Program-made: the position numbers and the translations under genes
Assembly (NCBI GenBank): GCA_000708835.1
Contig: DF237003.1
Location: forward strand, 43,419-107,418
From: Klebsormidium nitens
Taxonomy: Eukaryota > Plantae > Klebsormidiophyceae
Direction: 5' to 3'
Length of the DNA: 64,000 nucleotides
Notes under the pieces: model-generated
The model's database searches: none
What the model was told of the DNA's origin: nothing
The model's input: the letters and a program-made list of their open reading frames with translations, nothing else
Shown here: piece after piece, positions 6,873 to 54,722 of the stretch
How the letters are laid out: every line of letters begins with the position of its first letter
Position numbering within the stretch: the stretch's first letter is position 1

Positions 6873-9800
6873 CTACCGGCCCTGGGTTAGCATGGACATC
6901 TGATACGCCATGCTCATCTGGTGCGCCTCGCTGCCACTAACGCCACTCATCTCGCTCCACGTGGAATGGCTCGGGACGCTCGACTGCGCCGTACTCCCGG
7001 TCTGCATCCCGATGCTCCCGGTCCGCACCGGTCCGAACCAGTCGCCGGATCCGTCGTCCGCCGGCTCGTTCTGGGGGGTCCGGAACCCGGGCCCGGGCTC
7101 CCCCCTGGAAAGACTCTCCAGCTCGCGCAGGACGTCGGCCATGTCGGGCCGGCGGGATTCGTCGGTGGCGCAGCACGCGAGCGCGAGCGTGATCATGCGG
7201 AGCGCCGCAGAGGGGGAGAACTGGTTGTCCAGGCGGGGGTCCATGATGACAAGCGGCTGTTGACGGCCCAGCATTGAGTGGGCAGTGCGCATCACCTGGG
7301 CGGGAGGGGAAGGACTTCTAGTGTATATTTTGGAGCACTGCTTCCCATTTGGTCGACAGAATGAGACGCCAGGGATTCTGACAGCGATGTTCAGACTCCC
7401 CGTCAGGGTTGGAGGTTGAGGAGAATGAGGATCGCACTTCGGACTGCGGGCAAACTTGCCCTTTTTTCGTGACCCAAAGCGTTAAGGCTCAAGATCGGTA
7501 GGAGTTTGGAGTTAGTTACGGATTAGACGACCTGTGATTCTCGGCCAGTTCTCAAACTTCTGAACGGGACGGAGCCCCTAGAACCTTGCTCAGCTACGCC
7601 TCTTTGCCAGCTGCCTGGGAAACTGTGCTTTACGTTCGTCGTCGCCACTTCTAAAAGCGTTTGAACAGACTGGAAGCTCGACAGAGTGCTCTGGCGTCGC
7701 AGGTAGACCAAGAAGCAGAAACACGGTTTGAAAACGTGGCCCCCTAAAAAGTACTAGACCTTAAACGCCTTAGTCCTCGGATGCTCAGATCTGCTACTGA
7801 AAGCAGGTCGTAAGGATCCACATACGAAGCTTTTCGTTTGCTGGAACCGCCGAGATAGAAGGAAGGAAAAGGATCAAGGGCCCGCACAGGAGATACCTCG
7901 CCGTTACCTGCCAATTCACCTTGACGAGAGGAATCTCTGCAGAGCGACGATTGCGACCGAAACACCGAAAGAGGACTGGAAGTGCTGGCCTGCCAAAGGT
8001 CTAGAGGAGGGCAAGAACACAATCCGACGGACAATCTTCACACGTCTCATTTTGCTTTGAGTGAGGCCAATTTCCGGGGACCACAAACCTGAACCCCCCA
8101 GATTCAACTTGCTCCGCGTCCGTACCCCACCTTAACCCCGATACCTAACCCACACAGACTTCAGCCCAGGACTTGGGTCAACATAGCCTTTCTCAACGAA
8201 AAGCAGAAAACTATTGTTTGTCTAATCCTTACGGCGTCCACCAGGTTCTTGCGGCCGCCCTCGGGCGTCAGCTCGAGCGCCCGGTAGCCCGTCAGAATCT
8301 CGAGCAGCACCACGCCGAAGCTGTACACGTCACTCCGCTTCGTCACCTGCCGGTGGGGGGATGACGTCAGCAGGGCGGCAGGGGGACAACGGTGGGGAAT
8401 CAAAGATAGTGGAGTGGGTTCGTTCGTCTTTGCGAGGCAAGATTCCTATGACATTGTAAATGGGATTAGAGAAGATCACAACGAACTGCAAGTGACCTTT
8501 TGATATTTCCGTAAAGTGACGCGATACTTTTGTAACGACGTCGACTCCGAGAGAAAAGGAACGGAATATGCAGCCGTAGGGCGCCCTTCTAAGCGGATCG
8601 ACCAGAGCCTCGGATAGTGTTGCCCTCCGTTCATCAAGCCTCTCGTCTGAAGCGCAGTTCTTGCATTCAGTTTCCTCACTTGTGTCCTTCTGCGATCAGA
8701 GCACTGACACTGACCAGCCGTGCTCGTCTTCCGGTCTTCCAGAACGCAAGAATTCGAAACTCTCCTCCTCGCAAGCGGCAGTTCATATCGAAAGCAGCGG
8801 TGTTCGTCGCAACGAAAACGCTTCGACAGAAGCAAGACAAGACGAGGCACCGAAATCTGGATCAGCGCACCTGTCCATTGAGCGCGTACTCTGGTGCGAC
8901 GTAGCCGTAGGTGCCGCGCACGCGCGTGCTCTGGTGGCTGTCGCCCTCCTCCAGCAGCTTCGCCAGCCCGAAGTCGGCGACCTGACGCGCAAAAGCGGGC
9001 GGTCTGTAAGTTTTCGCAACTGCTTCGAAAACTTGCTCTGCGTGCTGAGTCTGGTGCCCCGGTCTGACTTCTGGTATGTGCGGGAATGTTTGGCAGCTTC
9101 AGGATCGTGGCGAGGAGTGATAAGGCAGGCTAAAGTTTGCAAAACAAAGCCAGCGTTGAAGCAAGGAGCGCATTGGAGAAAGGAGCGGATTGTTGTAGGA
9201 GATGCGTTAGTCAGGCGGCGCTTTGACGTGTTCCGGTAAAGGCTATTTGAACGGATGGTGGTTCAGATCGAAACGGATACCTTCCATCTCAAAAAAAGAG
9301 CGCCCACTCCGCGGCACTTCATGAAAAGGAAGACTCCGCGCCTTGGGTCGCAACTTCGCCTGATTCCGCTTTTTCCTACTGCAAATTCCTGGCTCCTTTT
9401 CACTATAAGTGGCCGCTCCCACAGTTTGCGGAAAGCGCAACACCGGAACCTTTGAGTCCCTTTGATCGACGACCATCAACAAGAAGTCCCGTTACCGACT
9501 TGCACACTGCGATTGCGGCATCGTTCCGTTTGTGTCACTAGTTGCACTTGCGTACTGCCATGTCCGGCGTCTTTCCGTTCTTGGAGCGGAATCCGGCCTC
9601 ACCTCCGCCTGCATCTTGGCGTCCAGGAGAATGTTGGCGGGCTTGATGTCGCGGTGCAAAATTGGCGGCTCCGTGTCGTTGTGTAGATACGACAGTCCGC
9701 GTGCCGCGCCCACTGCGATGTTGACACGTGTCTCCCAGTCCAGGGGGGGCTGGGAAGCTGAGATTAGGAAAGGCTCGGCGTCAGTCATGTGGCGTTATCG

Positions 9801-12800
9801 CAGGCCATTCGAGAGCAAACGCCGCTACCGCACGTTGGTCGCAACCCGTCAACAGCGTTTAACGCAAGCTCCTGCCTTTGTTAGGAAGTATCAAGGGTGG
9901 TTAGCTGAGGATTAAGTTAGGTCGCACTCGCACACGCAGCTCGGTTTCGGGGAAGCTACAATATCAGCTTGGCTTTCTTTGCACGCTCCAAGGACTCAGC
10001 TTGGAAGGGTGACAAGCGAAAACAAGGCCACGTCAGGCCGCAGTTGAAAAAATTAAGGCCCACGGGCACACACACATTCTCTTAAAAGGATATGCGCGTC
10101 CTTTGACCAGCTTATGGACTGAAAGGCTGTCATAGATGCCTAAGGAATCTGCAAAGGAGAGCAGCCAGGGGCGCCACCTGATCCTCAAACACAGAGACAA
10201 AATCAAAGCAGAGCCCCACTGGTAGCAGAGCCACGCGAAAGCACTCAGAACGGGACAGGAGACCTCCCTCCGACACGTATGAACCCTGAAACTCGAGAGA
10301 AGACATTCCTTGCACGGATACACTGCTTTGTAGGGTGCGATCACTGCAAACCGCAGTTCATTGAGGGAGCAGCAGACCAAAGCGACGGACAAGAAAGGAA
10401 GTCCCACTCACTGCTGCGCAGCGCGGCGTCCGGGTTTCCGTTGGCAGCGTAATCGGGCACGAGGAAACGGAGAATACGGTTTGCTGTTCCACAGGGCGCT
10501 GCAGAGCCACATAAAAAGGGGACGAAATAGCAATTGCGACAAGCAAACAGACGGACATACTCACTGCTGCGCAGCGCCGCATCCAGGTTCCCATTGGCGG
10601 CGTAATCGAGGACGAGGAAGCACGCGTCTGGCGTGACGCAGTGCCCGCGCAGCGCGACCAGGTTGCGGTGCCGCACGCGGCCCAGGGTGCCAAGCTCGCC
10701 TAGGAACTCGCGCTCACCCAGGCCCTGCGCAAACAGGTGAGAAACCGTGGTTCAGGATTGAGACGCGCCAGTGCAAAAGCGGAGGAGCGGAAAAAGGTCG
10801 CCAGAAATCAGATTTCTCGTACAAAGACTCATATGCCCAGCACGCCTTGTGCGCCCAATAATGCCCGCTCGCCCGGGCCCTGCACAGAATGGCGCGAGAG
10901 CGCACGTTGAGATGTTGACGCACGGAGAAGTTCCATGGTTCGAGAATATTGAGGTTTTAGGGCTTTTGAATTGTGACCGAGCTGCGATACCGCACGCGGC
11001 CTAGCGTTCCCAGCTCGCCTAGGAACTCGCGCTCGCCCAAGCCCCGCACAGAAAGTGCCCAACAACGGTGAGTCAGGTCGGAGAAGTGGCGAAGAGTGAA
11101 AGCCAACGAACGCGAACAAGTCTGCAGGAGCTTCCCTCTTTTCGCAGGACTTCATTTCTCCCTTTCTTTCGCGGAGAGCAAGGGGAACAAGGTCCGCCAC
11201 TCCAAAGAGCTTTTCTCCTTGACTTCTCACCCTGCAAGTCACGGCTATCCTCGTTCCAGGAACAGGATACTTTCGCGTAATACTAAAAGCGTGAACCGCC
11301 GGCGCCGCACCTTGTTTCCGGATTTGAGCTGCTTGACGGCCACCTGCGAGCCGTTGGCCAGAGTTGCCACGTAAACCTTCCCGTAAGCGCCCTCCCCCAG
11401 CAGTGCGCTCGGGGCGAAACTCCCGGTCGCCTGCTTGAGCTCCGAGTAAGTGAAGCGCCGCCACGAAGACCCGAGCGCCTCGTCTGCGTCCGCCTCCGCA
11501 GCTGGAAACCGAATGTTCGTGTGTAAGGGTTTCTTGCTTTCGAAAATATCACCCGTTTGGGCTGGGGCGAGGACTCGGGGGTTTTTGACAAAGAGGTGCT
11601 TTTAGACTAGTTGATGTGAGAGTTGGGGACCCTTGACGGAACGTAGTTTTGTGAGGAAAGTGCTTGGGGAGAACTGGGGATCGAGGTCAGGGGCTCGGAG
11701 CATGAAGATATGATCAATCGAATCGAAGCATGAGATATGATCAATCTAACAAGAGCTTGAACAGCAAAGCGACCAGGTTTCCGCGCTTGTTCGTCTCTTG
11801 AATCCATCTTCAGGTGTTAGTCTTAAAATGAGAGTTGCACCAACGCAAATCATCTGGTGCTTCAAGGGCCAACCTGTTGTTAGAAGTCAAGTTACGACTC
11901 AAACCCAGAAAAACACACACAAAGACGCAGAAGATTTGAGAGCCTGCGACCAGAGCAAATCTCAGCTCAGCCAAACCAAGCAAACACGGCGTTCTCCTCA
12001 CTCGACACAGTGCTCGCGGTTTTGTCCACCGCACTCCCGTCAACGCTCATCTTGGCCCCTCCGTCGTCCACGTCACCCTTGACCACCGGCAGATGGTGCG
12101 CGCGCTTCTTTTTGCGGACCGCGAGACACCCGACAATCACCCCGAGCAAAACCACCGCTCCGACGCCCGCCCCCGCCAGCCCGGCAATCAGCCCGGTCTT
12201 CGACGAGCTTTCTTTGGACGGGGCGACAGCAGGAAAGGGGGATGTGGTTCCGGCCGGGGGGGTTCCGGTCACGGTTCCGGCGGACTGGGGGGCGGAAGCT
12301 CCGGGGATTGTTGTAGTTTTAGTGGGGGCGGGGGTGGCAGACAGTGAGGAGGGGGGGAGGGCAACGGGGCCTGCACAAAGATTGTGCTACTTTGTTTCTT
12401 GTCGGCGAATTTGCAAAATGACCCTGCAAATGAACACCGTTGCGACTTGGGCTGCTGTGGATACGCGTGGGAACGCGAGACAGACCAGTCGTTGAAATAT
12501 TACGGGCTCGCTTTTGCGCCTAGGCGTGCCTTTGCTTCACGGAGTTTTGCTCCTCTGCACGATGCATCTCTCCCAGCCCTTTCGTGCGCCGCTCACGTCA
12601 AGTTGCAAAGTCTCCTCAACATGAAGCCCAGGACACCAGCTCTTTTGGGGTTCCGTGAGCTTAATCATTCTAAAAAGCGTGGCCTTTGTGGCTCACAAAT
12701 CGTACGGAGAGAACAAGTCTAAAACATCAGAGGTCCTTCACATTGCTCGACCGGCGCCCAGCAGCCGTCAGAAAGAAGGCAGGAGCAAAGCCTCGTAGCA

Positions 12801-15800
12801 TGCATGATTGTGGAAACCGACGGGCTGCACAGTACCTGCAATGACTTCTAGCATGCAGGACTTTGGATAGCCTGTCAAAAAGATGACAGGCTAAACAGAC
12901 GCCAAAATAACTAGACAGGGGGCGTCTCTCACTGGCAGCCAGGCTGACAAAGGGCGGGACGGTAAAGTTGTTGCTGGCGCCCACTGCCAGCAGGCCCGCG
13001 TCCCGGTTGTCGCACAGCCAGCCGCTCCCGCTGACGCCAGCAGGGCACGCGCAGACGGGAACTCCCCCAGAAAGAGTACACGTGGCAATGGGGTCGCACG
13101 GGTTGTTCACGCCGCAGTTGGCGAAGGCGCAGCCTGCCGCAACGAGAAGAATGGTGAAGTGAGGGATGTCGAGGGAGAGGAAATTAGAGGAATGTTTGGC
13201 GAGTTTGCCTTTCCGTTGCAACGGAATGCCGCTGCTTTTAAAGGAGAACTGACGTGGGCGTTTGTAGGGATTCTTGATAGACGGGGGAAAAACCTGTGCA
13301 GCAAGCTGAAGAAGCAGGATCCAGTCTCGACACGTTTGGAGACGTTAGCGGACCCCTAAACTTTTGCGATGTTTCCTGCCGCTTCACAACCAAACCCGCT
13401 GTATTGCAACAGGCGAAGAAACTGCTTCTCAGTTCGCAAGTCGACGTCCGGGCAACACTCACTTGAGTTGACGACCCCGCCAGCCCCCGGCACGACTATC
13501 CCCACCGGTTGGCTCGGGCAAAAGTTGGTCGTCCCGTCCGAGGGGCTGTTCGCCACCCTGATTCCGGCCCCCCCCAGCACAGAGTCTGCGCTGTTGCGCG
13601 TAAAGACGTTGGGGCTAGCAACAGTTGCATAGCTGTCGTCTAAAGACATTGCACCCCCTAACGGCGCATAGTTCTGGATGAAGTTGTTCCCGCTGAGGAG
13701 CGTGAAGTAGCTGCTCTCGTCGAACACGGCCCCGCCGCTCTCCTGCAAACGGTGGGCTAAGGTAAGGAGTCCTTCTTAGCAGGGGGGAGTAAGCAGAAAA
13801 CTTCGCCTCAGCTCTATGGTGCACAGAAGCGACGGCAAAGCCGCTCTCCTGCAAACTGCGGGCTGAGATAAGGACTCCTTAGCAGGGGGGGTGAGTAAGC
13901 AGAAAACTTCGCCTCAGCTCTATGGTACACAGAAGCGACGGCAACGCCGTTCTCCTGCAAAGTGCGAGCTAAGACAAGGACTCCATATTAGCAGGGGGGA
14001 TTCGAGCAGGAAGCTTTGCTTCAACTCCTTGGCGCACAGAAGTCGGGCCGCCGCCAAGTGGTGAGTGTATGATTCGCTACTCGCGACAGAAATGCTGCCG
14101 CGTTCCCGTCTGCGAGCGGCTCGAACGACCGTCTCATCGGGACAGACGAGATACAAGCAACACCCTTGCAAGCAAGCTCAGTACTTGTCCGTTCCATACG
14201 TTTGTGGCTGTGCACAACTGCAAGTGGAAGTGGTTCGACGAAAGCCGTCTAGAGCGGCGATGGCCCCGCCCCACCAGCATCTTTCAAAGCTCCAGCTTAC
14301 AAAGAGGACGTAAGAAGACCTGCCCAATCTCAAAGAGGAAACCTGACGCACCAGCTTTGCAGTTGCCACATGGCGGCCTTGACTCGAAGTTCAGCTGCCA
14401 TCGAAACAAACGCTTTAAAGCGCAGAGAACCCCTTGCTCGACGTCGTCTTTCGTATCATCATGCGATTACATCCAATGCAACAAGACACGGAAAAAAAAG
14501 CGGGCGGGGTGTCCTCACGTAGGCCGTATTGTTGGCAAAGGTGTTGCCAGCGATGGTGATATTCCGCGTACCCGAGTCCACGTAGACCGCCCTGCAAGCA
14601 GAACCGCACGTGCTTCTTAAGTCTGTCTCTAGCTCGAAGATTGGGGGGAGGCCAAGATAGACGAGCAGTCTAATACTTCTAGGGCTTTTTCTCATATGTC
14701 AGCAGTTGCGGGTATTTTGTTGGGGCTGTTAGGTGATGGTTTCTTTTTGCATCTTTGGTTGGATCTTGTCGACGTTTAGGGCCAGAAAACGTTCGTATCT
14801 TGTCTGTAGCACGAGAGACGGTCCGTCCTTTGCTCTCAGAAAAGGCCCGTTCGGACACTGGTCAAAACTGGCTAGGCACTATGCGGTCGGACCGGCAATG
14901 CTGATACGCAAAATGCCCTGAAATCTTTGCTTCGAATGCCTAGAAGCGGCCGTAGCTACAGAAAACAATCTGGATGACCGAACGCACGCCTTAAAGATAG
15001 GGTTAGCTTATGCTTTCGACATCCTGAATCAAGAGTACTGTCTTGCCAGACCACAGGGGACATAACAGTCAGCAAACAATGCGGCAACCAGATTGCAACA
15101 CGTTACTTGACCGCCCACCTGATCAAAATAAGATGCTCAGATTTGACGGGCCATCATCTGTCGTCGCAAGGCCTAATTACTTAATACCTGTGTCTCGAAA
15201 CGCCGAGACCTTTCGGCGGATGACCTCGATGCTGAAATCACAGTGATGAAGTGGGGCCAAAGTTCGTAATGAGGCTGCCCCAAACGGGTACAGAAACTCT
15301 TCTTGAATGGGTCCAATCACGCACCCGCCTTTCGACGTCGCATTGTTGTACAGAAAGAGGGACCCGCGGATGGAGTTCGTGGCAACCGTGGGGCCGAAGG
15401 AGTCGTACAGAGAATACACGTTGATGGCCCCGCCTTCCTGCGGCAGCGTACACAAACTTCTGGGTTAGGTTGACTGAGAGCTTGTTAACTAAAGGTTCTG
15501 CTTGGGACTACGAACGAAATCCAGAACCTAACCCGCTCTAGAACCCAGTTTAACTACCCAGATCAAAACGCGTTTTGCCGGGCAGTTTGGTTAGTCAACA
15601 TGGTCCTTAGTCAACGTGAGATTGGGGGAATTAGCGCAAACAACCCAGCGTTCTGGGCAGTCTCGGAAAATAGAGGCGAGGGAGCGAAAGCACGAAGAGG
15701 TGGCGGGCAAAGGTTGCAGGATAGCAAGAAGACGCATGGAACGTGCACCACGTACATCAAGAGGCTGCGCGTTTGCTTATATGCCGGATCGTCTGTCTCA

Positions 15801-18800
15801 GACAGCTGGTTCCGAGTGGCTATTGCCGGTGCGGAATTGTCGGGTCACGACCGTCTATCCGGAATTGCGAACCCAAGTTCAAGTTTTACACAAGCGAGTG
15901 TGGATCTGCAAAATCTTTCCTGCGACACACGTTCTCGAGATCCTGGGAAACGAACACTTGCGGCAATTATCTAGGACTCTCGACATCAAAGTAAGTGATG
16001 GATCGTTTGAGAGGATGCCATTTACACCTGGTCTCGCAGAAGAGCGAATAAAGGAGCCATCAAAATCGATCAGGGCCAAAAGGTGGCTCTTCTGCTAGAC
16101 GGCGAAGGAAAGAGAATACGATAGACGTGACCTTGCAAGCGGGTTAGCTAGAATGGTCGGAGGCCTTGTCTTACGTCCGCACTGTTCTGCGTGAAGTTAG
16201 AGTTCCTGACGTCTATGGCTGTCCCATCAGCGTACAGGGCCCCTCCGCCGGAAGATGCGCTGTTGTTCACAAACTGGCAAGCTGTGATGGTGGCGTTTCC
16301 CTGGTAGTAGATCGCACCTGCACCACCAGACTTACTTTAAGAATGATGAAACCAGGCTTCAGATTATTCTGCGGCTCCGCTTCTACGTGAGACGCCGTTC
16401 GAAGCAATGACAAGGATTACTAGTATGGATCGAAGCCTGTAGCCTTGTTGAACGGTCGAAGAGGAAGAGTCGAAGGGTATCATATAGCAACTTGACATCA
16501 CTCACAACAAAGGACCTTGAGCGTAAATCTGCTGTCTGTTCAGCAGAGAGCTGCAGTAGCCCCGTGCAGTTGGGTGCAAATCATGAAAGGCTGGACGCTT
16601 TCGGACCCTCTGCCCTTCGTGCTTCTGCGCAGGCAAGCTCGATTTCATTTCCTCCCAGGGATGTGCCCAGACCGTTCTGTCTTTGAGTACTGCCTTTGAG
16701 TACGGTGTGGGCGAGTGCAAAGTGAAGAGAGATGGGCGGAGAGAAGCGCCTCTTCCCGTTTCAGCCAAGAGGCTTTTCCGTGTCCCTTGGCAACGCCCTC
16801 CCGTTTATCTTCCCTGATCAAGCCTCTCCCATCTCCGCAACTGGTGATTGCCCCCTTTCTCCTCACTCTTCGGTCGTGCAAGCAGTCCTTCCCGGTTTGC
16901 TCTACACGTGTTCTCCCGCTCCATCGTTTCAAGATATAATCTCACCTCCGTACGACGCACGGTTGTTGGTGAACAGCACGGTATCGGCCACCAAGTATGT
17001 AGACGACCGCGCATAGATCGCGCCGCCGTATGTCCCGCTCGAGGTGCTCGATCTGGAGGTCTGCAAAACGAACCATTTCGTAAGCCGGAAATTGCGGCGC
17101 ATGGGTGTCTTACATGGACTCTCAATTGTGTGCTGAAGCACCTTCATGGGGACAAGGAGAAAGCTGATGCTAGGGCTTTCTGGAACCTAGTGAATCACCG
17201 TCGGATTCGATCGAGCGGTTCCAAGTTTCGTGAACCGCAGTCGAACAGCCTCCAATCGGACGGTTTGCGCGTTGAAAGGAGCCCTCACTAATATTGGACG
17301 ATGTCAATTGTATTTTGACAGCCCCAGCCTTTGCTTCGTTCCAGTACCGACTCTCTTTTCTCCGCTCTTTCATGACACGACATCAAGCAGCAAGAAAACG
17401 CTTCCCTTTGCAAGGACGATTGCAGGCACCAGGAATTCCAACGCGCAGTTACAAGAAAGCGAAACCCTTTTGATCATGATTTCTCCTAATCCCTGAGCGC
17501 AGCATGACAGCGATCCGCCACATACACGTGCCCTCTAACGAGCGGCCCTGGCAGTGCTACGAGAGATGAATTTGAGCAGTGGCCAAGGTAAGAAGCTCAG
17601 GAATCTAAGCTGAGGAGCGGCTTTCGGCTACAGATCCGACGTGGAGAGTTTCGAAAGCAGGGGCACTCACATCGCCTTTGTCCAGCCACAGGTTCCGGAA
17701 GATGACGTTCCCGGCGTTTGCAGCGACGTCGAAGAGTCGCAGCTGCAAGGAGAGTTATCTTCTACAAAATAGTAACACAATCGCACCCTGCTTACAGACA
17801 CGATCTTGTTATGATTTGGTTTCATGAATTTGATTGGCATCTCAGACTTGGGTGCAATGTTTGGAGTTGGAGTCTATGTAGAGGGCTAGGCATGATCGTC
17901 TCTGTAAGCATCAAGTGCTCCCTCACAGCCAAGAGAATGCGGCACATATGTTTGGCTCTGCAGTTGGGATTCGACATCCGTGTATGCTAAGCAAGAGGCC
18001 GGACGAGCATTACATGCATTTCAGAATAGATGAAGAATATAGTCTCAAGAAACAGCCCGAACCCTTGGTTGAAGCCAGACAAACAAGCAATGGACAATCT
18101 GCCATGTCAGACCGGAGACAAGGAGAATCGGTACCGGACGGAAGATTAAGGCCGGGGCCTGTTGGAACCTCAATAGCGACGTCACCCCTGTCTGCATTTC
18201 TCATTGACGCCGTCCGATTGTCGGCACCACAACATCTGACGGCGTGAACGAAGTTTGAAACCCGATTCTTGGGTTGCTGAGTCTTGTGCACAGCAGAGGT
18301 CCAATAGCAGCTTATTGAGTTCCGACGCTTCAGAACCGGAGGAGTCTACGTTTCGATTGACATAACCCGATTTCCAACTGGCCCCAGCCTCAGCTTCTTC
18401 CTGGTACCGATTCTCCTGATCCCCGCTCTGTCAGCCTGCTGCTCCAGAGCATTGAGCGGTGAGTCGCCAATATAAGGGCACAGAGGAGGACGATAGCTTA
18501 CGCTGGTGGTACTCGTGGATGGCGCAGCGTAGATGCGGCAGCCGGGAGAAGGGCATTGCCCAACTAGGGTGATGGACCGCTGGATCCCAATGGTGGCAGA
18601 AAGCGCAATGTCGCTGCAGGGGGGCACCCAAAAAACCTTTTGTTTAGCTAGGAGATTAATACACATGGACAGAGTGAGAGCTGGAGGTGTGCAACGGGGA
18701 GATTTGGGTCAGCTAACTGCGTCAACAGTTTGTTATGAATCTGAAGCGCAGCCATGCAGCTGATCTGTTGGGGGCGTATTAGACAGGACTGTGTAGGCCG

Positions 18801-20246
18801 ATGAAAGGGGACTTGAGATTGCGAAGACTGCATATCTACCACGTCATTGAGACGGGCTCCTCGGTTGAGTACTCAAGAGTAGAAGGCAGACACGACAAAG
18901 TCAAATAGCACGGAATGTCACAAACTTCAGGCCCTGGACATGTAAAACCTTCCCTGTTGCAGCCAACAGCGCTCACTTGCAAATGTTGACGATCGCATCC
19001 CCCGCCAGGTTGCTAGCGGCGCTTTGCAGCCCCAAAGCGTCCTGCACGCCGACGCACGCCTGCCCCGCAACTGCAAAGGAATCCGAAGACTTTGATTTAC
19101 AGGAGTATAAGGTTTGGCGATCGTTCTCATCCGAACTGCCCGGCCTTGCATCTGGAACCATAAAGTCTTGTTGAATTCTCAACTTTCTTGTCCGTTTGCA
19201 GTGGCGTGCAAGTATCGTATGAGTAGCACTCCGATGGTGTACAAACCCTTGCTCAAGCAAATGTTGCTTTCTGGGGGCAGAATTTTGACCCTCTGCGATG
19301 TACGGAAGAGCTCCTCAGAATCTCCTGAGCAGCCACCCCCGAATTGCCCACATTTGTGCGATTGCAGTTTCCCAGCCACCCCCTGTGAGCCCACATTCGA
19401 CATTTGATTCTGGTTCCAATTTGCAGGTCTTGGCAATTGAAGATGCTGCAGGCAGATACCAAAACAGCCCATCCCACAGCAAGCTTGTTCGGTCAAGGTG
19501 GTAGTATCTTTAATTGTAAGAGCCCGCTTCTGTCCAACGCTGCTCAATGTGCCGTCCAAGCAACACCGTGAGTGGCACGGGAACAAATATTGCGACCTTA
19601 GAATGCAAAAGCTGTGGCGAATTTGTGACAATGCTGTTTCAAAGCCTTGCCATTTACAGAAAACAAGAACGTCCCGCTCAAAAACCTGGCCCGTATACCC
19701 ACGCACATTCTTCAACAACAATTGCCCAATTGAAAGCATTCTTTGTCCAGATATGCCGTCACCAACTTCTTAGTACCGACAGATTACTTTCAACAGGACC
19801 AACCCTACCATTGGATAGCCTGTTTCCTTATAATAGCCGTCCAGATTCACAATCTTGGCAGTCGCGAGCTGTAACACACCCCGAACACCTCCTGTGTCGA
19901 TGTGCCCCATAATGTGGTAATTTCCAGCCATGTCCGCGCTTGACCAAAACTTCAGGTAAACCCTCAGAGTGGGTGCCCCTCACTTCCCAAGCATTGCCAA
20001 GCTTCTCGCAATTACAATTCCCTGTGAGAATTGCCTGAAAGCCCCAAGAAACCCTTCCTTGTCACGAGGCTCCACTTTGCGCCATCGTTAGAAAAGCCCA
20101 CGAGTCCCTCAATGCTCACAATTTCAAGGGAGAAACCGCGCATTGCCACAATTCTCTGGCTGTGGCTCACCTCCATTCATCCGGCTAGCGCAGAAGACCA
20201 CCGTCAGCCAAAAGGCGGCCAATGCCGCTGCCTTTGGGGGCAACAT
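6873..20246 (-). CDS. Receptor-like kinase, copy 1 (intact, ~933 aa): signal peptide, GGA/FxxN beta-helix repeats, EGF-like module, Pro/Thr stalk, TM, RD-type RLK/Pelle kinase
   Basis: 17 exons: 20246-20171, 19070-18977, 18613-18502, 17742-17671, 17060-16946, 16317-16175, 15437-15325, 14591-14519, 13742-13463, 13133-12933, 12370-12002, 11501-11311, 10724-10565, 9757-9603, 8981-8871, 8346-8233, 7295-6873. Sum 2802 nt, all phases consistent. Kinase motifs [86 protein letters not shown] followed by [43 protein letters not shown]. Confidence 0.93.
10400..11050 (-). repeat. Decayed partial duplicates flanking RLK1 exon 13: one donor-side copy and two acceptor-side copies
   Basis: ~10405-10460 repeats DYAANGN.DAALRS plus the gtgagt donor. 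~10860-10890 and ~11005-11050 repeat the acceptor plus [12 protein letters not shown]-like sequence. Confidence 0.85.
13740..14020 (-). repeat. ~106-bp tandem repeat triplicating the acceptor of RLK1 exon 9
   Basis: The ttgcag|GAGA(G/A)CGGC acceptor occurs at 13743, 13849 and 13955. Only the last-transcribed copy (13743) opens the exon. Confidence 0.9.
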
Positions 20247-41589: not shown

Positions 41590-44500
41590 ATGTTGCCCCC
41601 AAAGGTAGCGGCATGGGCCACCTTTTGGCTGACGGCAGGTCTCAGCGCTAGCTGGACGAGTAGAGGTGAGTCACAGCCAAGGAATTCTGGCATTGCAAGC
41701 TTTCTCCATTGAAATCTTCAGTATTAAGGGACTCGTAGACCCTTGCGATGACACAAAGTGGAGGGCGTGGTGATGAGGGAGAGTTTCTGGGGGCTTTCAG
41801 GCAATCCTCACAGGGGATTGCGAGAAGCTTGACGATGCTTTGGGATTGAGGTGCACCAACTCTGAGGATTCATTTGGATGTTATAGTCAAACATGGAGAT
41901 TGCTGGAGATCACTACATTTTGGGCACATTGACTCAGAAGGTTTATGAGGTGATAACTTAGCTCGCGCCTGCCAAGATTGTGAATCTGGAAGGCTGTCCA
42001 AAGGGAATCAGGCTATCCACAGGTAGGAGGGGCTGATGTAAAAGCATTCTTGTTGGCATACCAAGAACTTGGTGTACTGCCTTTTTGGACATTGACCAAT
42101 TGCGCTTTGAGAACGTGCATGGGCGTAAGGGCCAGGTTTTCTGAGTATAAAATTCTTGGTTTTTGAGAAGGAAAGGCTGTGAAACAGCATGGTCACAAAG
42201 AAACCCCTGTTTCCCCTTCTAAGGTCGCACCATTCGTTTCCCATGCCAATTGTGGTGTTTCTGGGACGGCACAATGAGCGGCTTTGTCACGGCAGGCAAG
42301 AGGACAGAAGCTGGTCCTTACAAATCGAAGAAATACCATCTTCTAAGATCAAGCTCGCCGTGGCATGTCCCAAACATGGTACTCGCCAAGAAAGAAGAGG
42401 ATAGAAGAAGCTTTTACATTTCCGATCACAAGACCAGACAATTCTGACAACAATCTTGACCAGATTCTGTACTCCTGCAAATGGAGTGATTCCAATTTCG
42501 GTGCAGTTGCGGGCCAGGCGTGCGTCGGCGTGCAGGACGCTCTAGGGCTGCAAAGCGCCGCTAGCAACCTGGCAGGGGATGCAGTTGTTAACATTTGCAA
42601 GTGAGCACTTTTGACAGCAACAAAGAAGGGATTTGTGTGCCCGAGGGCTGGTTGCTGAGTTTGGCTCTCTGAATATTTACTGTGTCACTCTGCCTTTCCC
42701 CCTGAATGCTCAGTTGTGGAGCGCGTCTCGATGATGTTAGATTATCAGGTATACACAACTTCAGGTCGCCTTTTGTATCAGTATACACGGTGTATCTTTA
42801 CCCCCGCTCCGCTTGAACAGCTGACTGCGATCCAGATTTGCGACTTTCTGTTAAGGGCATTAGCTGAGAGAATTGCAATTGGCTCTGGTACCAAATTGAC
42901 ACTTTCCACTTCCCCAGGACTTACAAAGCAACATGCCTCAACTCCAGCTCTTGTCCACTTCATGCTTCTTGACTGAACAAAAGTGCTTCATCTGTCCCCC
43001 TACAGCGACATTGCACTTTCTGCCACCATCTCAATTGCGCGGCCCATCACGCTGGTGGGGCAATGCCCTTCCCCTGGCTGCCGCATCTACCCCGCACCAT
43101 CCTCCAGTAGCACCAGGGTAAGCTATGGTTCTCCTCTCTGCGCCTATGTCGAGAACAAAAATGAAATTATCACTTAGTGCTCTGATCTAGCATGGCCGAC
43201 ACATTGCTCACTGATTGTTTGTTCACAAGTCTGGCTTTGAGCATACAACAGGGTCCAGCTTTTCTTGAGAGTGCATTGGTTCTTCTATGCTGAAATGCAC
43301 TTGATGCTTGTCTGGCTCATTGCCAAACGTACACAGATTCCCGGTTTCAGTATTCTACTGTAGCTGCAAAAACATCCTTCAAGTGTAAAGTTGAAGCTTG
43401 GCGGTCAAAGTGCATTTCTAGCACTTCGTTGTGATTCATGGCTTGCTTTCCGGCTTCCCAAAAGACTCGACTCGAAAATACCCATGTCTCGGATGCCGGA
43501 AAAAGGTTAGCGAACTCATTCATACAAAGACAATGTCTGTAAGCAGGGTGCAACTGCAATTGCTCCTTCCCAACCCTCTCAATCACTCTCCTTCCAGTTC
43601 CGACTCTTTGACGCTAATGCTAACGGGACTGTTACATTCCGAAATCTGTGGCTGGACAAAGGCGATGTAAGTGCCCCAACTCTGAAAGACCTCCGCACCC
43701 GACCTTCCGCCGAAAGCTGCTCCTCAGCTTAGATTCCTAAGCTGCTCGCTTTGGCCACCACTCAAGTCATGTTACCGTAAACTCTGTGATTGCCAGGGTC
43801 GTTTCTGAGAGGGCACATGTATCTTCAAACACTTTGTCTTGAGCTGATTTATGGCTCGCCGCTTGAGGATCAGGAAGGGTCAGCATGAAGGGGATTACGG
43901 GCCAAAATTGCTTGACCGCTCTTCTGGTGCCTGCAACCGTCCTTGGACAGGAAGAAGCGTTTCCTTGCTGCTTGATGCGTGTACTGGTAGAGCGAGGGAA
44001 AGGAGAGTCGGTGCTGAGAAGAATCAGAGGCTAGGGCCTGTTTAGAAACGGTGGTACATCTTCCAACGTCAGTGAAAGCTCATTTGAACGCTCGAGCCGT
44101 CCAATTCGAGGCTGTTCGACTGCGGTTCTTGAGACTCTGAACTGCTCAATCGGATCCGACGGTGATTCACTAGTGTCCAGAAAGCCTTAGCCTCAGCTTC
44201 TTTGCGATATCAATCCTCCTTTTCCCTTATGAAGATGCTTCAGCACACAGTTGAGAGTCCATGTAAGACACCCATGCATTGCCACAATTTCCGGGCTTAC
44301 AAATTGGTTGGTTTTGCAGATCTCCAACTTGGCCACCCATGCATACGGCGGCGCGATCAACGCGCGGACGTCCACATACCTGGTGGCCGATACCGTGCTA
44401 TTCACCAACAACCGTGAGTCGTCCGGAGGTGAGGCCACCCTTTTCGATGGAGCGGGAGCAACGTGAAGAGAAATCTCCGAAGGATTGCTTGCAGGAGAAA

Positions 44501-47500
44501 GGAAAAAGAGTGCTGAAACCAGCCGCGGATGTATCAGATCCTCGAACATGGACAGTTGAGGATGAAGGTTTATTGGCAAAAGAGATGAGAGTCTCTTGGC
44601 TGAAACGGAGAGATTTTCTTCTTTTGGCCCATCTGCAGTCACTCTGCATTCGCCCAGACCGTTGGCAAAAGGGACATGCCAGAAGAAATAATTATAGAGC
44701 TTGCCTCCGCAGGAGCACGAGGCAGAGTGTCCGAAACGCGAAGCCTTTCACGATCTTGTACCAAACCCGAAGGGTGCACGGAGCTACTGCTCCAGCTTCT
44801 TGCAGAACGAATAGCTACACTCCTCAATCTTTCTATCACGTTGCTGTTCGAAACCCTCTGACTCTTCTTCTTCAATCTGTCGACCGGCCTAACGTTCTAA
44901 TCTTACTAGTGACCCTTGTCATTGCTTCTTACGGCGACCATGCAGAAGCAAGCCGCAAATGCCTTGAAGACTGGTCTCGTGATTGTCGGACTTTGGTGTT
45001 GCAGGTGCGATCTACTACCTGGGAAACGCTACCATCAACTCATGTACCTTTGTGAACAACAGCGCAATCTACTCCGGAGGAGCCCTGTACGCCGAAGGGA
45101 CAGCAATGGAAGTCAGGAATTCCAACTTCACGCAGAACAGCGCGGTCGTAAGACAAGGCCTCCGACCAATAAACCGCTTCTGAGCTCACATCTATCGTTT
45201 TTGATTAATTAATGTCAAGCATAAGAGCCACCTTAATTTTGGCCCTGATCGAGATTGATTGCTCGTTTATCCGCTCTTTTGCCAGGACAGGTGTGAATCG
45301 CATCCTCGAGTGACCTTAAATGTACTTGTTGTCGGACCCAGTGTTTGCCGCAAGTGTATGCTTTAGAGGACCTCGAGAAAGTGCACCGGCAAAAGTGCCT
45401 TTTATTCCACACCCGCTTGTTAAATCTACTCAGACTTTTCTTCACAAGTCTGGATAGACGGTCGTCACCCGACACTTTCGTAGTGGCACTATCCTTTGAA
45501 CCACTCGGCACCGAAGGGTCTGAGAGCGACGTTCCGGCCTTCACATAAGCGAACACGCGCATCGCCTCGAATTCTTTGGCCCACGTCCCATGATTCCTCC
45601 TTGTTATACAGCAAGCTTTGCCCGCCTTCCCTTCGTCCTCTTCTCTGGTTAGCCTCTATTGTTTCCGGAACTGCTCGGAACGCTGTGTTGTTTGCGCTGG
45701 TTCTCACATTGACTAAGGGCCATGTTGACTAACCAAAGTGCCCGGAAAACGCGTTTTTGGTTTGGATAGTTAGGATGGGTCGAGAGCGGGTAAGGTCCTC
45801 AGGTTCGTTCGTAGTCGCAAGCAGTAGTTTAGCTAAGATGCTCTTACTCAACCTGAGCAAGAAATTTGTTTGCTCTCGCTGCAGTATGGCGGGGCTATCA
45901 GGGTGTATTCCCCGTACGACTCCTCCGGCCCCTTCATTGTCAAGAACGCCATCCGCGGGTCCCTCTTCCTGTACAACCATGCGTCATACGGCGGGTGCGT
46001 CGTTGGATCCATTCAAGAAGATTGATTCGGACTTTTTGTAACCGTTTGGTGCTACCTCGTTACAGTTTTGGCCCCACTTCATCACTGTAGAACCAGCTTT
46101 CAAGTCATTCGTCGCAACGTCTTGGCGAGTCGAGACTAAGGTCTTATTTCATCAGGCCTTGCGACGACAAACAATGGGCCCGTCGAATCATCAGCTCGTT
46201 TGGCAATTAGGTCGGCGGTCGAGTAACGTACTTTAACTGTCACGTTGTTGGCTGACTGTGATGTCCGCTGTGGTCTGGTAAGATTGTACCCTTATGTCAA
46301 GATGAAAAAAAGTAAAGCTAGCCCTTCTCTAAGGCGTGCGGTCAGTCATCCTGATTGTACTTTGCCGCCGCTTCCTAGTCATCATAAGCAAAGCGTTCAG
46401 GAACCATCCAAGCTTCAGCATTGCGTTTACGACCGCACAGCGCTTAATCAGACGATTGCAAGGCTTGCCTCGGTTCCGGACGGGCTTTTTCTGTAAGAGC
46501 AAAGGGCGTACCGTGAGAAGCAGGTACGGCTGTGCTTGCAGGGCGGTCTACGTGAGTTCGGGAACGAACAACGTCACTATTGCCGGCAACACCTTCGCCA
46601 ACAACACGGCCTACGTGAGGAGAACCCGCCAGCTTCTTGTCCTTTCCTGTGTCTTGTTGATTGCACATAAAAGCTGGTGGGGTGTCGAGCAAGGGTTTCT
46701 CTGCGCTCTAGAAGGTATGTTCTTATGGCAGCTAGGTTACGACTCAAGGCCGCCTGCTAGTAGGCATGCGGCAACCGCACTGCCGGGCATCCCCATAGAG
46801 ACCTCCTCCTTTATGAGAGACGCTGGCTGAGCGGAGCAGTTGAAACACTAGACAGGCTTTCGTTGAAGAAATTGTTGTATTTCTGCACCGATCATCAACG
46901 CCTGAAACGGACAAGTACGAGCTTGCTTTGCAAGGGTGCTGCCATTGTTGCGTCCAGTCAACAGAAACAACAGGAAACAACAGGAAACAACGCTTGCAGT
47001 CGGTTCGCAGGAGCAAATCTGTCGCGGGTAGGCATTCAAGTACTCGCCATTGGCGGCGGCCCGACTTCTGATAGTCAATGAGCTGAAGCGAAGTTTCCTA
47101 CTTCAATTCCCTACTTGTTATTTAGGCGTCTTTACCTTTACCCGCCTTTTGCAGTCGAACGGCGGGGCCGTGAACGACGCTGGCGGTTACTTGACGCTCC
47201 TCAGCGGCAACAGCTTCATCCAGAACTACGCGCCGGATGGGGGCGCTGTATCTTTATATGACAGCTATGCGATTTTTGCCAGCCCCAACGTGTTCATCCG
47301 CAACAGCGCAGACTCTGTGCCTCAGGGGCCTGGAATCAGGTTATCTTATGGGACGACCAATTTTTGCCCAAGCGAGCCCGTCGGGATAGTCACAGTCCTG
47401 TTTGGGGGGGTGGTGAATTCGGGTGAGTGTTTCCTGGAAGTCGACTTGCAAATGTGAAGCAGTTCCTTCGCCTGTTGCATACTGAGGGGTTGGTTGTGCA

Positions 47501-53500: not shown

Positions 53501-54722
53501 CGAAGCGGAGTGACGTGTACAGCTTCGGCGTGGTGCTGCTGGAGATTCTGACGGGCTACCGGGCGCTCGAGCTGACGCCCGAGGGCAACCGCAAGAACCT
53601 AGTGGACGCCGTAAGGATTATGCAAACAAGTGTCCTCACCGACCTGCTTTTAGGAGCGGATGTGGACAGTCGGAGATTGAGATGGTCTAACCTTCGAAAT
53701 CCAATAGTCATCAGTGGGTTACTTTTTTGATCGTGTTTCGCTTCTTGGTCCTCCTGTAACGCCAGAGCATCTGAATCTCGTTTGGCGCCTGTCCGCCCAT
53801 TTGTACGCTCAGTCCGAAACACGTCTGAATCAGGTCTGAAACAATCTGAACTCGATCTGAACCTTACTTCGATTCGGATTTGATTCAGATGTTATTCAGA
53901 CAAAAGCTTTCTCAAAGTGGCACTGGGTCGAGCTTCCAGTCTGTATAGATGCATTACGACCTGGAGCAACGACTGCAGAACACAGTCTCTCATGCAGCTG
54001 TGAACAAAATGCAGCTGACGAAATCCTAGGGGCTTCGTCAATTTCAAAAGCTCGAGCGATCGGGCGAGAACCACCCGTCATTTCACTGCTTGCTACTTCC
54101 GAATTCCTATTGACTTTAAGCTTTGACCCCGTTGGGCCATGAGCAGAGCATGGGCGCTCGCCTTCTGGGCTGCGGTCTCCATTCTCCTCACCCCCAAATC
54201 TTGACCATGAATCCGGTCAGAATCCTCTCTGTAGTAGACCAAATGAAAAGGCAGTACTTCCAAAGCACACACTAGGCTTACCCACCCCCCTCCGCTCAGG
54301 TGACGCGAACCGCCCACAAGACGCCGGGGCGCCAGCAGCCGCTGGTAATAATGGACCCCCGGCTGGAAAAGCAGTTCTCCACTTCCGCGGCGCTCCGCAT
54401 GATCACGCTGGCTCTCGCGTGCTGCGCGAGTGAGGACTCCCGCCGGCCCGACATGGCCGACGTCCTGTACGAGCTGGAGAGTCTTTCCAGGGGGGAGCCT
54501 GGGCCCGGGTTCCGGATCCCCCAGACCGAGCCGGCGGACGACGGCTCGGGTGACTGGTTCGGGCCGGTGCGGACTGGGAGCCTTGGGATGCAGTCAGGGA
54601 GTACGGCGCAGTCGAGCGTCCCGAGCCATTCCACGTGGAGCGAGATGAGTGGCGTCAGCAGGAGCGAGGGGCATCAGATGAGCATAGCGTATCAGATGTC
54701 CATGCTGAGTCAGGGCCGGTAG
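41590..54722 (+). CDS. Receptor-like kinase, copy 2 (inverted paralog of 6873-20246), with an apparent +1 frameshift at the end of exon 12; possible recent pseudogene
   Basis: 17 exons: 41590-41665, 42507-42600, 43006-43117, 43598-43666, 44320-44428, 45005-45147, 45885-45994, 46542-46614, 47155-47422, 47753-47953, 48794-49096, 49728-49919, 51119-51278, 52169-52323, 52890-53000, 53497-53610, 54300-54722. Sum 2713 nt (3n+1). Exon 12 is 192 nt against 191 in copy 1. Same domain order and kinase motifs as copy 1. Confidence 0.88.
47930..48150 (+). repeat. ~45-bp tandem repeat, about four decayed copies of the exon 10 end and donor region of RLK2
   Basis: ttgtcagcc(c)tgg(g)ctgcca...aacgcc(c/g)cc(t/c)gtc recurs four times after the real donor at 47954. 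The unit matches the single exon-end/donor junction of copy 1 (tttgtcagcctggctgcca|gtgagagacgccccctgtctag). Confidence 0.85.
50340..51560 (+). repeat. Five decayed acceptor-side copies and two donor-side copies of RLK2 exon 13
   Basis: (g)gcctgggcgag...ctgggc...gcaccgcaa(c/t)(c/t)tggtc-like units start at ~50348, 50504, 50649, 50813 and 50956, ahead of the real exon at 51119. aacctggatgccg(c/g)gctgcgca.cagtgag copies lie at ~51368 and ~51528. Confidence 0.9.

What the first reader, a model, noticed from the sequence alone, without database searches (positions are those of the whole stretch)
6873..20246. Receptor kinase with a Pmp-like beta-helix + EGF ectodomain, an architecture I do not recognise among land-plant RLK classes
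Seen in sequence: after a signal peptide and cap region come about eight GGA(I/L/V/M) motifs alternating with FxxNxA-type motifs ([101 protein letters not shown]). These are followed by an EGF-like module, a Pro/Thr stalk, a TM helix and an RD-type RLK/Pelle kinase with catalytic motifs intact. Established: GGA(I/L/V)/FxxN repeats define the right-handed beta-helix of chlamydial polymorphic membrane proteins, related to the pectin-lyase fold; WAK receptors pair a pectin-binding domain with EGF and a kinase. Inference: an algal receptor family that reached a WAK-like layout convergently and may sense wall polysaccharides or microbial surfaces.
Basis: partly seen in the sequence, partly recalled or inferred. 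Interest (0 to 1): 0.8.

Follow-up and report, generated by a model that had tools for sequence, protein, structure and literature searches.

The report
Algal receptor kinase with beta-helix head
A Klebsormidium-type green alga expresses a plant-type receptor kinase whose outer part is a bacterial-adhesin-style (Pmp-repeat) beta-helix plus an EGF module; I found this design described in no paper, and what it senses is unknown.

Summary
Window 20246..6873 (minus strand) is one 17-exon, all GT-AG gene of 933 aa. It encodes a signal peptide, an N-cap, seven strictly alternating GGA[ILVM]/FxxN Pmp-type repeats, a Cys-bearing C-cap, one EGF_3-like module, a Pro/Thr/Ser stalk, a TM helix and an RD kinase with all catalytic motifs.

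- **Transcript:** spliced contigs from four studies confirm seven introns, and one contig runs from exon 4 into exon 14.
- **Repeats:** the Klebsormidium subtile ortholog ectodomain (89% identical) scores Pfam Chlam_PMP at 4e-13.
- **Fold:** its AlphaFold model (pLDDT >90 over residues 30-330) superposes on solved right-handed beta-helices at Z 24-28.
- **EGF:** EGF_3 sits at or just below Pfam's threshold in five homologs. The fold itself could not be modelled.
- **Kinase:** every kinase exon tested hits plant RLKs or RLCKs first, and IRAK kinases follow for two of the five. The subfamily is unresolved.
- **Family:** an intact paralog lies at 41590..54722 (+). Four metagenome or sequencing-run loci carry the same layout at 33-68% identity.
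- **Selection:** purifying overall (dN/dS 0.15-0.16), relaxed in the repeats (0.49).

It is neither a WAK nor a chlamydial Pmp. A 2026 survey reports lyase-like heads on chlorophyte receptor kinases. The scan also noted a similar Pmp+EGF kinase on another piece of this genome. I rate it a new variant of a known kind; the ligand is untested.

The parts
20171..20246 (-). Exon 1: start codon and signal peptide ([25 protein letters not shown])
   Evidence: Hand model, donor GT, phase 1. The K. subtile transcript ORF P0002 begins the same way and joins to exon 2 identically.
17671..19070 (-). Exons 2-4 (19070-18977, 18613-18502, 17742-17671): N-terminal cap of the beta-helix, with four Cys (31, 56, 77, 82)
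   Evidence: In the AF2 model of the ortholog this is a helix at 37-46 followed by the first rungs, pLDDT >90. Conserved in L001, L006 and L007.
13463..17060 (-). Exons 5-9 (17060-16946, 16317-16175, 15437-15325, 14591-14519, 13742-13463): seven GGA[ILVM]/FxxN Pmp-type repeats, a degenerate eighth, and a C-cap with a conserved Cys (NFCPSQ)
   Evidence: Motif positions. TIGR01376 above cut-off on exons 5, 6 and 9. Chlam_PMP 4.2e-13 on the ortholog. All introns confirmed by spliced contigs. Predicted beta-helix, Z 24-28 to solved beta-helices.
12933..13133 (-). Exon 10: EGF_3-like module (six Cys at 366-400 plus Cys 361), followed by a conserved ~25-residue tail ([15 protein letters not shown])
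   Evidence: Pfam EGF_3 1.4e-5, 25.7 bits against a cut-off of 28.5, matching model positions 3-36 of 36. Four homologs score 1.5e-6 to 1.6e-4, and the L001 copy is above the cut-off. The structure of this part could not be modelled.
12002..12370 (-). Exon 11: Pro/Thr/Ser stalk (residues 427-485), TM helix (486-511), RKKKR stop-transfer and start of the juxtamembrane segment
   Evidence: Composition and hydropathy. Both flanking introns confirmed by spliced contigs.
6873..11501 (-). Exons 12-17 (11501-11311, 10724-10565, 9757-9603, 8981-8871, 8346-8233, 7295-6873): juxtamembrane FTYSEL motif, RD-type RLK/Pelle kinase, and a 70-residue Ser-rich tail ending [11 protein letters not shown]-stop
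   Evidence: Pfam Pkinase/PK_Tyr_Ser-Thr on the exon ORFs. Top PDB hits are BAK1, BRI1 and BIK1, then other plant RLKs/RLCKs such as SYMRK, with IRAK4 next for exons 14 and 16. Motif positions. Tail motif conserved in L001 and L007.
41590..54722 (+). Paralog, head-to-head with gene 1 and 21 kb away: same 17-exon layout, 939 aa, intact. The acceptor of exon 11 is uncertain.
   Evidence: tblastn of the model against the window. Exon mapping. 83% amino-acid identity and dS about 0.36.
13734..13999 (.). 106-bp tandem repeat (2.5 copies) in intron 8 that copies the acceptor and the first bases of exon 9
   Evidence: Tandem Repeats Finder and the sequence. Transcripts use the last copy.
10406..11055 (.). 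Dead partial copies of both ends of exon 13 in the flanking introns (10975-11055 copies the 5' end; 10406-10466 copies the 3' end plus donor)
   Evidence: the repeat finder. The paralog has the same copies, in triplicate. Transcript loose ends match the real exon 13.

Best explanation
This is a single-pass, type-I receptor kinase of the plant RLK/Pelle (IRAK) group. Its ligand-binding head is a capped right-handed parallel beta-helix of about 11 rungs, built from Pmp-type GGA[ILV]/FxxN repeats. The C-cap probably links by disulfide to one EGF_3-type module. A probably O-glycosylated Pro/Thr/Ser stalk holds the head off the membrane. Shown: the gene structure, its expression as one mRNA, the repeat family, the predicted fold, intact catalytic motifs, purifying selection, and conservation of the layout in at least six genes. 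Inferred: it sits in the plasma membrane, and the long face of the helix binds an extended extracellular partner. That partner would most likely be a wall or microbial polysaccharide, or a surface protein, as in bacterial and archaeal Pmp-type adhesins. Binding would bring kinase domains together for activation-loop phosphorylation, as in other RD-type RLKs. The repeat region evolves about three times faster than the rest, which fits diverging ligand specificity between the paralogs.
For: - **Gene model and transcript:** 17 GT-AG exons encoding 933 aa. Seven introns are confirmed, and one contig spans exon 4 into exon 14, in runs from four studies.
- **Repeats:** POMP_repeat is above its cut-off on three exons. 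Chlam_PMP scores 4.2e-13 on the ortholog ectodomain.
- **Fold:** AF2 gives pLDDT >90 for residues 30-330. VIA-align gives Z 24-28 and rmsd 2.6-3.1 Å over 280-300 residues to RbmB, AlgE4/6, AlgG, tailspikes, PfbA and Rhombotarget A. The nearest ESM Atlas shapes are archaeal and bacterial Chlam_PMP adhesin-like proteins, TM 0.64-0.72.
- **EGF:** EGF_3 hits in five homologs.
- **Kinase:** plant RLKs or RLCKs are the top hits for five exons, with IRAK4 next for exons 14 and 16. Catalytic motifs are intact.
- **Selection:** dN/dS is 0.16 in the kinase, 0.15 in the EGF and N-cap, and 0.49 in the repeats.
- **Conservation:** the same layout occurs in the paralog and in L001, L004, L006 and L007.
Against: - No ligand, localisation or kinase activity has been tested.
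- The fold rests on AlphaFold2, which can over-predict beta-solenoids for repeat proteins (bioRxiv 10.1101/2024.10.30.621056, listed). The model is of the K. subtile ortholog, not of this exact protein.
- The C-cap and EGF part could not be modelled (pLDDT 32-51; 42).
- The top structural matches are enzymes (lyases, epimerases), so a catalytic head is not excluded.
- The kinase subfamily is unresolved.
Confidence: 0.7

Rival explanations
1. It is an adhesion receptor. The Pmp-type helix mediates homophilic or heterophilic protein-protein adhesion (cell to cell in the filament, cell to substrate, or cell to microbe) rather than glycan sensing, and the kinase reports contact.
For: The closest sequence and shape relatives are surface adhesin-like proteins of Methanobrevibacter and Methanosphaera and bacterial outer-membrane repeat proteins. 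Chlamydial Pmps are adhesins that oligomerise (reference list of PMC10715098). Scan notes report Pmp+EGF modules in secreted or adhesin-like proteins of the same genome (not tested here).
Against: No binding data exist. Identity to adhesins is about 24-39% and largely confined to the structural repeat motifs, which say little about what is bound.
Confidence: 0.2
2. It is an enzyme-coupled kinase. The beta-helix head is a working polysaccharide lyase, epimerase or hydrolase, and the kinase is regulated by substrate turnover.
For: The best structural matches are RbmB lyase, AlgE4/AlgE6/AlgG epimerases, PL6 lyases and tailspike depolymerases, at Z 24-28. A survey of chlorophyte receptor kinases reports many lyase-like ectodomain regions (PMC12757656).
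Against: Sequence identity to these enzymes is 11-18%. The sequence families that match are the non-enzymatic Chlam_PMP/POMP repeats. No CAZyme family was hit in Pfam. I did not check catalytic residues position by position.
Confidence: 0.07
3. It is a gene-model artefact: two neighbouring genes (a secreted beta-helix/EGF protein and a separate kinase) wrongly joined, or a decaying duplicate.
For: The K. subtile transcript ORF P0002 is flagged complete and ends right after the EGF exon, at 431 aa. The introns hold dead copies of exon ends.
Against: Spliced contigs join exons 10-11 and 11-12 in four runs, and one contig runs from exon 4 into exon 14. The ORF is intact in both paralogs. dN/dS is 0.15-0.16 in the kinase and EGF parts. 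Four diverged loci show the same order of parts.
Confidence: 0.03

Closest known systems
Wall-associated kinases (WAK/WAKL) of land plants
   Same: A type-I RLK/Pelle receptor with a non-LRR head thought to contact a polymer, followed by an EGF-type module, a TM helix and an RD kinase.
   Different: No GUB_WAK galacturonan-binding domain was found. There is one EGF_3-type module rather than EGF/EGF_CA repeats next to the membrane. A 59-residue Pro/Thr/Ser stalk lies between the EGF module and the TM helix. The head is a Pmp-repeat beta-helix. Whether the kinase falls in the WAK clade was not tested.
Chlamydial polymorphic membrane proteins and Pmp-repeat adhesin-like proteins of Methanobrevibacter, Methanosphaera and various bacteria (Pfam PF02415, TIGR01376)
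   Same: The same alternating GGA[ILV]/FxxN repeat family and the same predicted right-handed beta-helix. These are the closest non-algal relatives by sequence (about 24-39% identity) and by shape.
   Different: Those are prokaryotic surface proteins anchored by an autotransporter barrel, Ig-like domains or sorting signals. Here the helix is on a spliced eukaryotic gene, followed by EGF, stalk, TM helix and a plant-type kinase. None of the 203 proteins fetched carries kinase motifs.
Chlorophyte receptor kinases with lyase-like ectodomain regions (PMC12757656, 2026)
   Same: Green-algal membrane kinases whose ectodomains resemble pectin-type lyases by structure search, which probably means beta-helix heads.
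   Different: They are reported only as a functional class, from Foldseek and pLM-BLAST annotation in Chlorophyta. The text does not mention Pmp repeats, EGF or a beta-helix, and streptophyte algae were not included. The supplementary tables are not held.
Right-handed parallel beta-helix carbohydrate-active proteins (RbmB 9ozl, AlgE4 2pyg, AlgG 4nk6, PL6 lyases, phage tailspikes) and the adhesins PfbA (4mr0) and Rhombotarget A (9cdv)
   Same: Same fold: Z 24-28, rmsd 2.6-3.7 Å over 267-313 residues.
   Different: Identity is 11-18%. No shared enzyme family signature was found, and none of them is fused to a kinase.

Membership tests
RLK/Pelle (IRAK) protein kinases | Complete eukaryotic protein kinase catalytic core (G-loop, VAIK Lys, HRD, DFG, APE) | tested here: met
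   GEGAYG at 585, K606, HRDIKPAN at 701, DFG at 721, APE at 747, RRPDM at 841. Pfam Pkinase/PK_Tyr_Ser-Thr on the exon ORFs.
RLK/Pelle (IRAK) protein kinases | Closer to plant RLKs and animal IRAKs than to other kinase groups | tested here: met
   For exons 12, 13, 14, 16 and 17 the top PDB hits are BAK1, BRI1 or BIK1, followed by other plant RLKs/RLCKs (SYMRK, FERONIA, CERK1, PBL2). IRAK4/IRAK1 come next for exons 14 and 16.
RLK/Pelle (IRAK) protein kinases | Falls inside the RLK/Pelle clade, and in a named subfamily, in a kinase-domain phylogeny | not tested
   No reference set of subfamily kinases could be fetched, because the word search only returns proteins of 0.55-1.75 times the query length and every exon is short. 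The joined kinase domain was not sent to search tools.
WAK/WAKL receptor kinases | N-terminal galacturonan-binding GUB_WAK domain (PF13947) | tested here: not met
   No such hit in Pfam scans at E<=1 of most ectodomain exon ORFs or of the whole ortholog ectodomain.
WAK/WAKL receptor kinases | EGF or EGF_CA repeats directly before the TM helix | tested here: inconclusive
   One EGF_3-type module, separated from the TM helix by a tail of about 25 residues and a 59-residue stalk.
Chlamydial Pmp autotransporters | Repeated GGA[ILV]/FxxN motifs (PF02415, TIGR01376) | tested here: met
Chlamydial Pmp autotransporters | Pmp middle domain and C-terminal autotransporter beta-barrel | tested here: not met
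   No such Pfam hits. After the repeats come EGF, stalk, TM helix and kinase.
Right-handed parallel beta-helix (pectin-lyase-like) fold | Stacked three-strand rungs forming a right-handed solenoid | tested here: met
   This is a prediction only. The AF2 model of the 89%-identical ortholog has pLDDT >90 for residues 30-330. Z 24-28 and rmsd 2.6-3.1 Å over 280-300 residues to crystal structures of this fold.
EGF_3 (PF12947) module | Six-Cys EGF pattern matching the family profile | tested here: inconclusive
   This gene scores 25.7 bits and its window paralog 27.6 bits, against a cut-off of 28.5, both covering nearly the whole model. The L001 homolog scores 28.8 bits, above the cut-off. The Cys spacing fits. 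The AF2 model of this part is unusable.
PERK / extensin-like RLKs | Ectodomain made of Ser-Pro(n) extensin-type repeats | tested here: not met
   The stalk is Pro/Thr/Ser/Ala-rich (12 P, 11 T, 11 S in 59 residues) but has no SPPP-type repeats and is only a linker.

The most novel reading that the evidence does not exclude
This would be a receptor-kinase subfamily specific to Klebsormidiophyceae. Its sensing head, a capped Pmp-type beta-helix plus EGF_3 cassette, would also be used by secreted and wall proteins of the same alga. The cassette would have been captured from prokaryote-type surface-adhesin repeats, possibly by horizontal transfer, and the kinase would monitor a wall or biofilm polymer or a microbial surface in a land-dwelling alga. 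That would be an independent, non-LRR, non-lectin solenoid solution to surface sensing at the base of the land-plant lineage.
Probability: 0.2. Interest if true: 0.7.

Novelty: new variant of a known kind. Interest (0 to 1): 0.45.

Why it matters
Plant receptor kinases are grouped by their outer domains, and land plants use a limited set: LRR, lectins, LysM, malectin, WAK, DUF26 and a few others. Klebsormidium lies near the base of the lineage leading to land plants and lives on land. An expressed, conserved, multi-copy receptor kinase with a Pmp-type beta-helix head shows that early streptophytes tried head designs that land plants did not keep.

It also offers a concrete candidate for wall-polymer or microbe sensing in an alga whose receptors are uncharacterised. 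In addition, surveys that call any kinase with an EGF hit a 'WAK-RLK' may overstate how old true WAKs are.

The interest is moderate. Lineage-specific ectodomain-kinase fusions are already known to be common in algae, and no function has been shown here.

Tried and rejected
1. **Joined protein not sent to search tools.** Exons were searched by reference. The joined sequence was used only inside local scripts, for coordinates, tblastn against the window and fetched loci, and dN/dS.
2. **Exhaustive HMMER search with exon 9.** It gave only 58 hits. The library seems to hold no full-length protein of this gene, so it cannot show absence from other plants.
3. **Word search with P0002.** This search can only see proteins of 237-754 aa. 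None of the 120 listed hits carries a kinase family in its precomputed Pfam list.
4. **First alignment for folding (A1).** It put the exon fragments on the wrong repeats. I dropped them and used A2.
5. **AF2 of the C-cap plus EGF piece.** It failed, with pLDDT 42.
6. **One wrong frame.** In one search the exon 2 reference was one base out of frame. That row is void.
7. **PDB sequence searches with exon 9 or P0002.** Nothing useful.
8. **Literature.** Searches for Chlam_PMP or Pmp together with receptor kinase or alga, and for Klebsormidium with beta-helix, returned nothing. Gong and Han 2021 and Dievart 2020 are not held.
9. **Alternative exons.** I considered that the exon-13 junction copies might be alternative exons. 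I rejected this for the 5' copy, whose acceptor AG has become GG, and transcripts use the real exon.
10. **Kinase subfamily tree.** Not possible without reference sequences.
Full report
**What is there.** From the ORF list and the sequence I built a 17-exon model. Every intron is GT-AG and the phases are consistent, giving a 2802-nt CDS of 933 residues. The parts, in order, are:

- a signal peptide;
- a cap region with four Cys;
- seven GGA[ILVM] motifs (residues 130-295) strictly alternating with seven FxxN(x)A motifs (148-313), plus a degenerate eighth GGAG;
- a C-cap with a conserved Cys (NFCPSQ);
- a seven-Cys stretch with EGF spacing;
- a 59-residue Pro/Thr/Ser/Ala stalk;
- a strong TM helix (486-511) followed by RKKKR;
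- an RD kinase with G-loop, K606, HRD, DFG and APE intact.

**Is the model real?** Twenty public runs from seven studies hold part of the stretch. Most shares (0.20-0.45) are near or above its 26% exon content. I laid contigs of four runs from four studies on window 11300-17100. All seven introns between exons 5 and 12 are skipped exactly as modelled. One 2259-nt contig runs from exon 4 into exon 14. Its loose ends match the end of exon 4 and the true start of exon 13. So the repeats, EGF, TM helix and the start of the kinase are on one mRNA. Exons 1-10 are joined in the same way in a Klebsormidium subtile transcript ORF (P0002, EukProt). That ORF is 89% identical to the model over 427 residues. 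Exons 13-17 rest on canonical splice sites, kinase homology and conservation in other loci. The runs are flagged only as 'RNA?', but spliced contigs can only come from RNA.

**Which organism.** The 89% ortholog is from K. subtile, and earlier scan notes call this genome Klebsormidium nitens. I take it to be a Klebsormidium.

**The repeats are Pmp-type and more than chance.** NCBIfam TIGR01376 (POMP_repeat) passes its curated cut-off on exons 5, 6 and 9 separately. Pfam Chlam_PMP is at threshold on single exons. It reaches 4.2e-13 (48.5 bits, cut-off 20.6, four stretches) on the ortholog ectodomain.

**The fold.** I folded P0002 with a 49-sequence alignment of Pmp-repeat homologs (A2). The model has pLDDT >90 for most of residues 30-330 and shows regular short strands. 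Foldseek returns only right-handed beta-helix proteins. VIA-align gives Z 24-28 with rmsd 2.6-3.1 Å over 280-300 residues. The matches are RbmB lyase, AlgE4/AlgE6/AlgG epimerases, phage tailspikes, the adhesin PfbA and Rhombotarget A. The nearest ESM Atlas shapes are archaeal and bacterial Chlam_PMP adhesin-like proteins, with TM 0.64-0.72.

There are three caveats:

- AlphaFold2 is reported to over-predict beta-solenoids for repeat proteins (bioRxiv 10.1101/2024.10.30.621056).
- The model is of the ortholog, not of this exact protein.
- The last 100 residues (C-cap and EGF) are not modelled.

**The EGF module.** A separate fold of residues 300-431 failed, with pLDDT 42, so the fold is untested. 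By sequence, the EGF exons of this gene, its paralog and three diverged homologs all match Pfam EGF_3 over essentially the whole 36-position model. E-values run from 1.5e-6 to 1.6e-4, and the L001 copy is above the gathering score. I treat it as an EGF_3-type module, with that reservation.

**The kinase.** Each kinase exon tested (12, 13, 14, 16 and 17) finds plant RLKs or RLCKs first in the PDB: BAK1, BRI1 or BIK1, followed by others such as SYMRK, FERONIA, CERK1/LysM kinases and PBL2. IRAK4 and IRAK1 come next for exons 14 and 16. This is the signature of RLK/Pelle. I could not place the subfamily. No reference kinases could be fetched with exon-sized queries, and the joined domain was not sent to search tools.

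**It is a family.**

- **Paralog in the window.** tblastn of the model against the window finds a second copy on the plus strand, head-to-head and 21 kb away. I mapped it as 41590..54722: 17 exons, 939 aa, intact. The acceptor of its exon 11 is uncertain.
- **Selection between the two copies.** Between the copies dS is about 0.36. dN/dS is 0.15-0.16 in the N-cap, EGF, TM/juxtamembrane segment, kinase and tail. It is 0.49 in the repeat region and 0.68 in the stalk.
- **Exhaustive search.** HMMER with exon 9 against 1.84 billion representatives gave only 58 hits. The close ones are P0002 and exon-sized ORF fragments. The next are Methanobrevibacter and Methanosphaera adhesin-like proteins and bacterial repeat proteins, at about 36% identity over about 55 residues.
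- **Diverged loci.** The contigs behind four fragments carry the same order of parts at 33-68% identity. L001 and L007 are two diverged members from one JGI metagenome, and L007 shows exons 3-17. L006 and L004 come from sequencing-run assemblies, and L004 shows no EGF exon.
- **Conserved tail.** The cytoplasmic tail motifs DWF, S[TS]WS and a terminal [AP]YQM[ST][MI]xxGR are conserved across these loci.

**What it is not.**

- **Not a WAK.** No GUB_WAK domain was found. There is one EGF_3 module rather than EGF/EGF_CA repeats, and it sits far from the membrane.
- **Not a chlamydial Pmp.** The middle domain and the autotransporter barrel are absent.
- **Not a PERK or extensin-type RLK.** The stalk has no SPPP-type repeats.

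**How it most likely works.** I read it as a plasma-membrane receptor kinase whose elongated beta-helix face binds an extended partner. Binding would bring kinase domains together for activation, as in other RD-type RLKs. The faster-evolving repeats fit a specificity-determining surface. Whether the partner is a glycan or a protein is open. The fold's solved relatives mostly act on polysaccharides, whereas the sequence relatives are adhesins. An enzymatic head is unlikely on family grounds but was not excluded residue by residue. All of this paragraph is inference.

**Novelty.**

- Searches for Chlam_PMP/Pmp with receptor kinase or alga, for Klebsormidium with beta-helix, and for PF02415 found no description of this fusion.
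- A Pmp structural paper lists Trichomonas, Phycisphaerae and Methanobrevibacter as non-chlamydial carriers. My term search of that paper turned up no algae or kinases (PMC10715098).
- A 2026 survey of chlorophyte receptor kinases does report many lyase-like, pectin-type ectodomain regions (PMC12757656). A beta-helix head on a green-algal membrane kinase therefore has a generic precedent.
- Ngou et al. 2024 class any kinase with an EGF hit at E<=10 as 'WAK-RLK', and their sample includes Klebsormidiophyceae (PMC10834447). This gene type may be hidden in their algal WAK-RLKs; that is an inference.
- The two key surveys of streptophyte-algal RLKs are not in the library.
- The scan itself noted a similar Pmp+EGF kinase, and Pmp+EGF secreted proteins, on other pieces of this genome. 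I did not check those notes.

**Verdict.** I rate it a new variant of a known kind, with moderate interest (0.45).

**Rules followed.** The joined spliced protein was not sent to any search or folding tool. It was used only in local scripts.

Noticed in passing
window 41590-54722 (+): A second, intact copy of the same receptor kinase (939 aa, same 17 exons, 83% amino-acid identity), head-to-head with the first. About 21 kb holding unrelated genes lies between the two start codons.
   Followed up: partly
window 10406-10466 and 10975-11055; paralog 50811-51023 and 51362-51591: Both ends of exon 13 have dead partial tandem copies in the flanking introns: one copy each in gene 1 and two each in gene 2. 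The duplications therefore predate the gene duplication. The 5' copy in gene 1 has lost its acceptor AG.
   Followed up: partly
window 13734-13999: A 106-bp tandem repeat (2.5 copies, 86% matches) in intron 8 repeats the acceptor region and first bases of exon 9. Transcripts use the last copy.
   Followed up: partly
window 6873-7090 (tail of exon 17); L001 20100-20308; L007 14600-14807: The Ser-rich cytoplasmic tail ends in a conserved motif, [AP]YQM[ST][MI]xxGR-stop, with upstream DWF and S[TS]WS motifs. These are kept at 45-50% overall identity and may be a docking or regulatory site.
   Followed up: no
P0002 (Klebsormidium subtile transcript ORF): The ortholog ORF is flagged complete but stops four residues after the EGF exon (…SLAAS-RRFG-stop). 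This could be a soluble ectodomain isoform or a retained intron. No contig lay on intron 10 in the four K. nitens-type runs laid.
   Followed up: partly
L004 2580-3330: This diverged family member goes from the last repeat exon to the stalk/TM exon with no recognisable EGF exon between them, so the EGF module may be optional in the family.
   Followed up: partly
window 27735-28361 (-): An ORF with an EF-hand-like motif (DIDGDGRISCEEF) lies between the two receptor genes. It is probably an exon of an unrelated calcium-binding protein gene.
   Followed up: no
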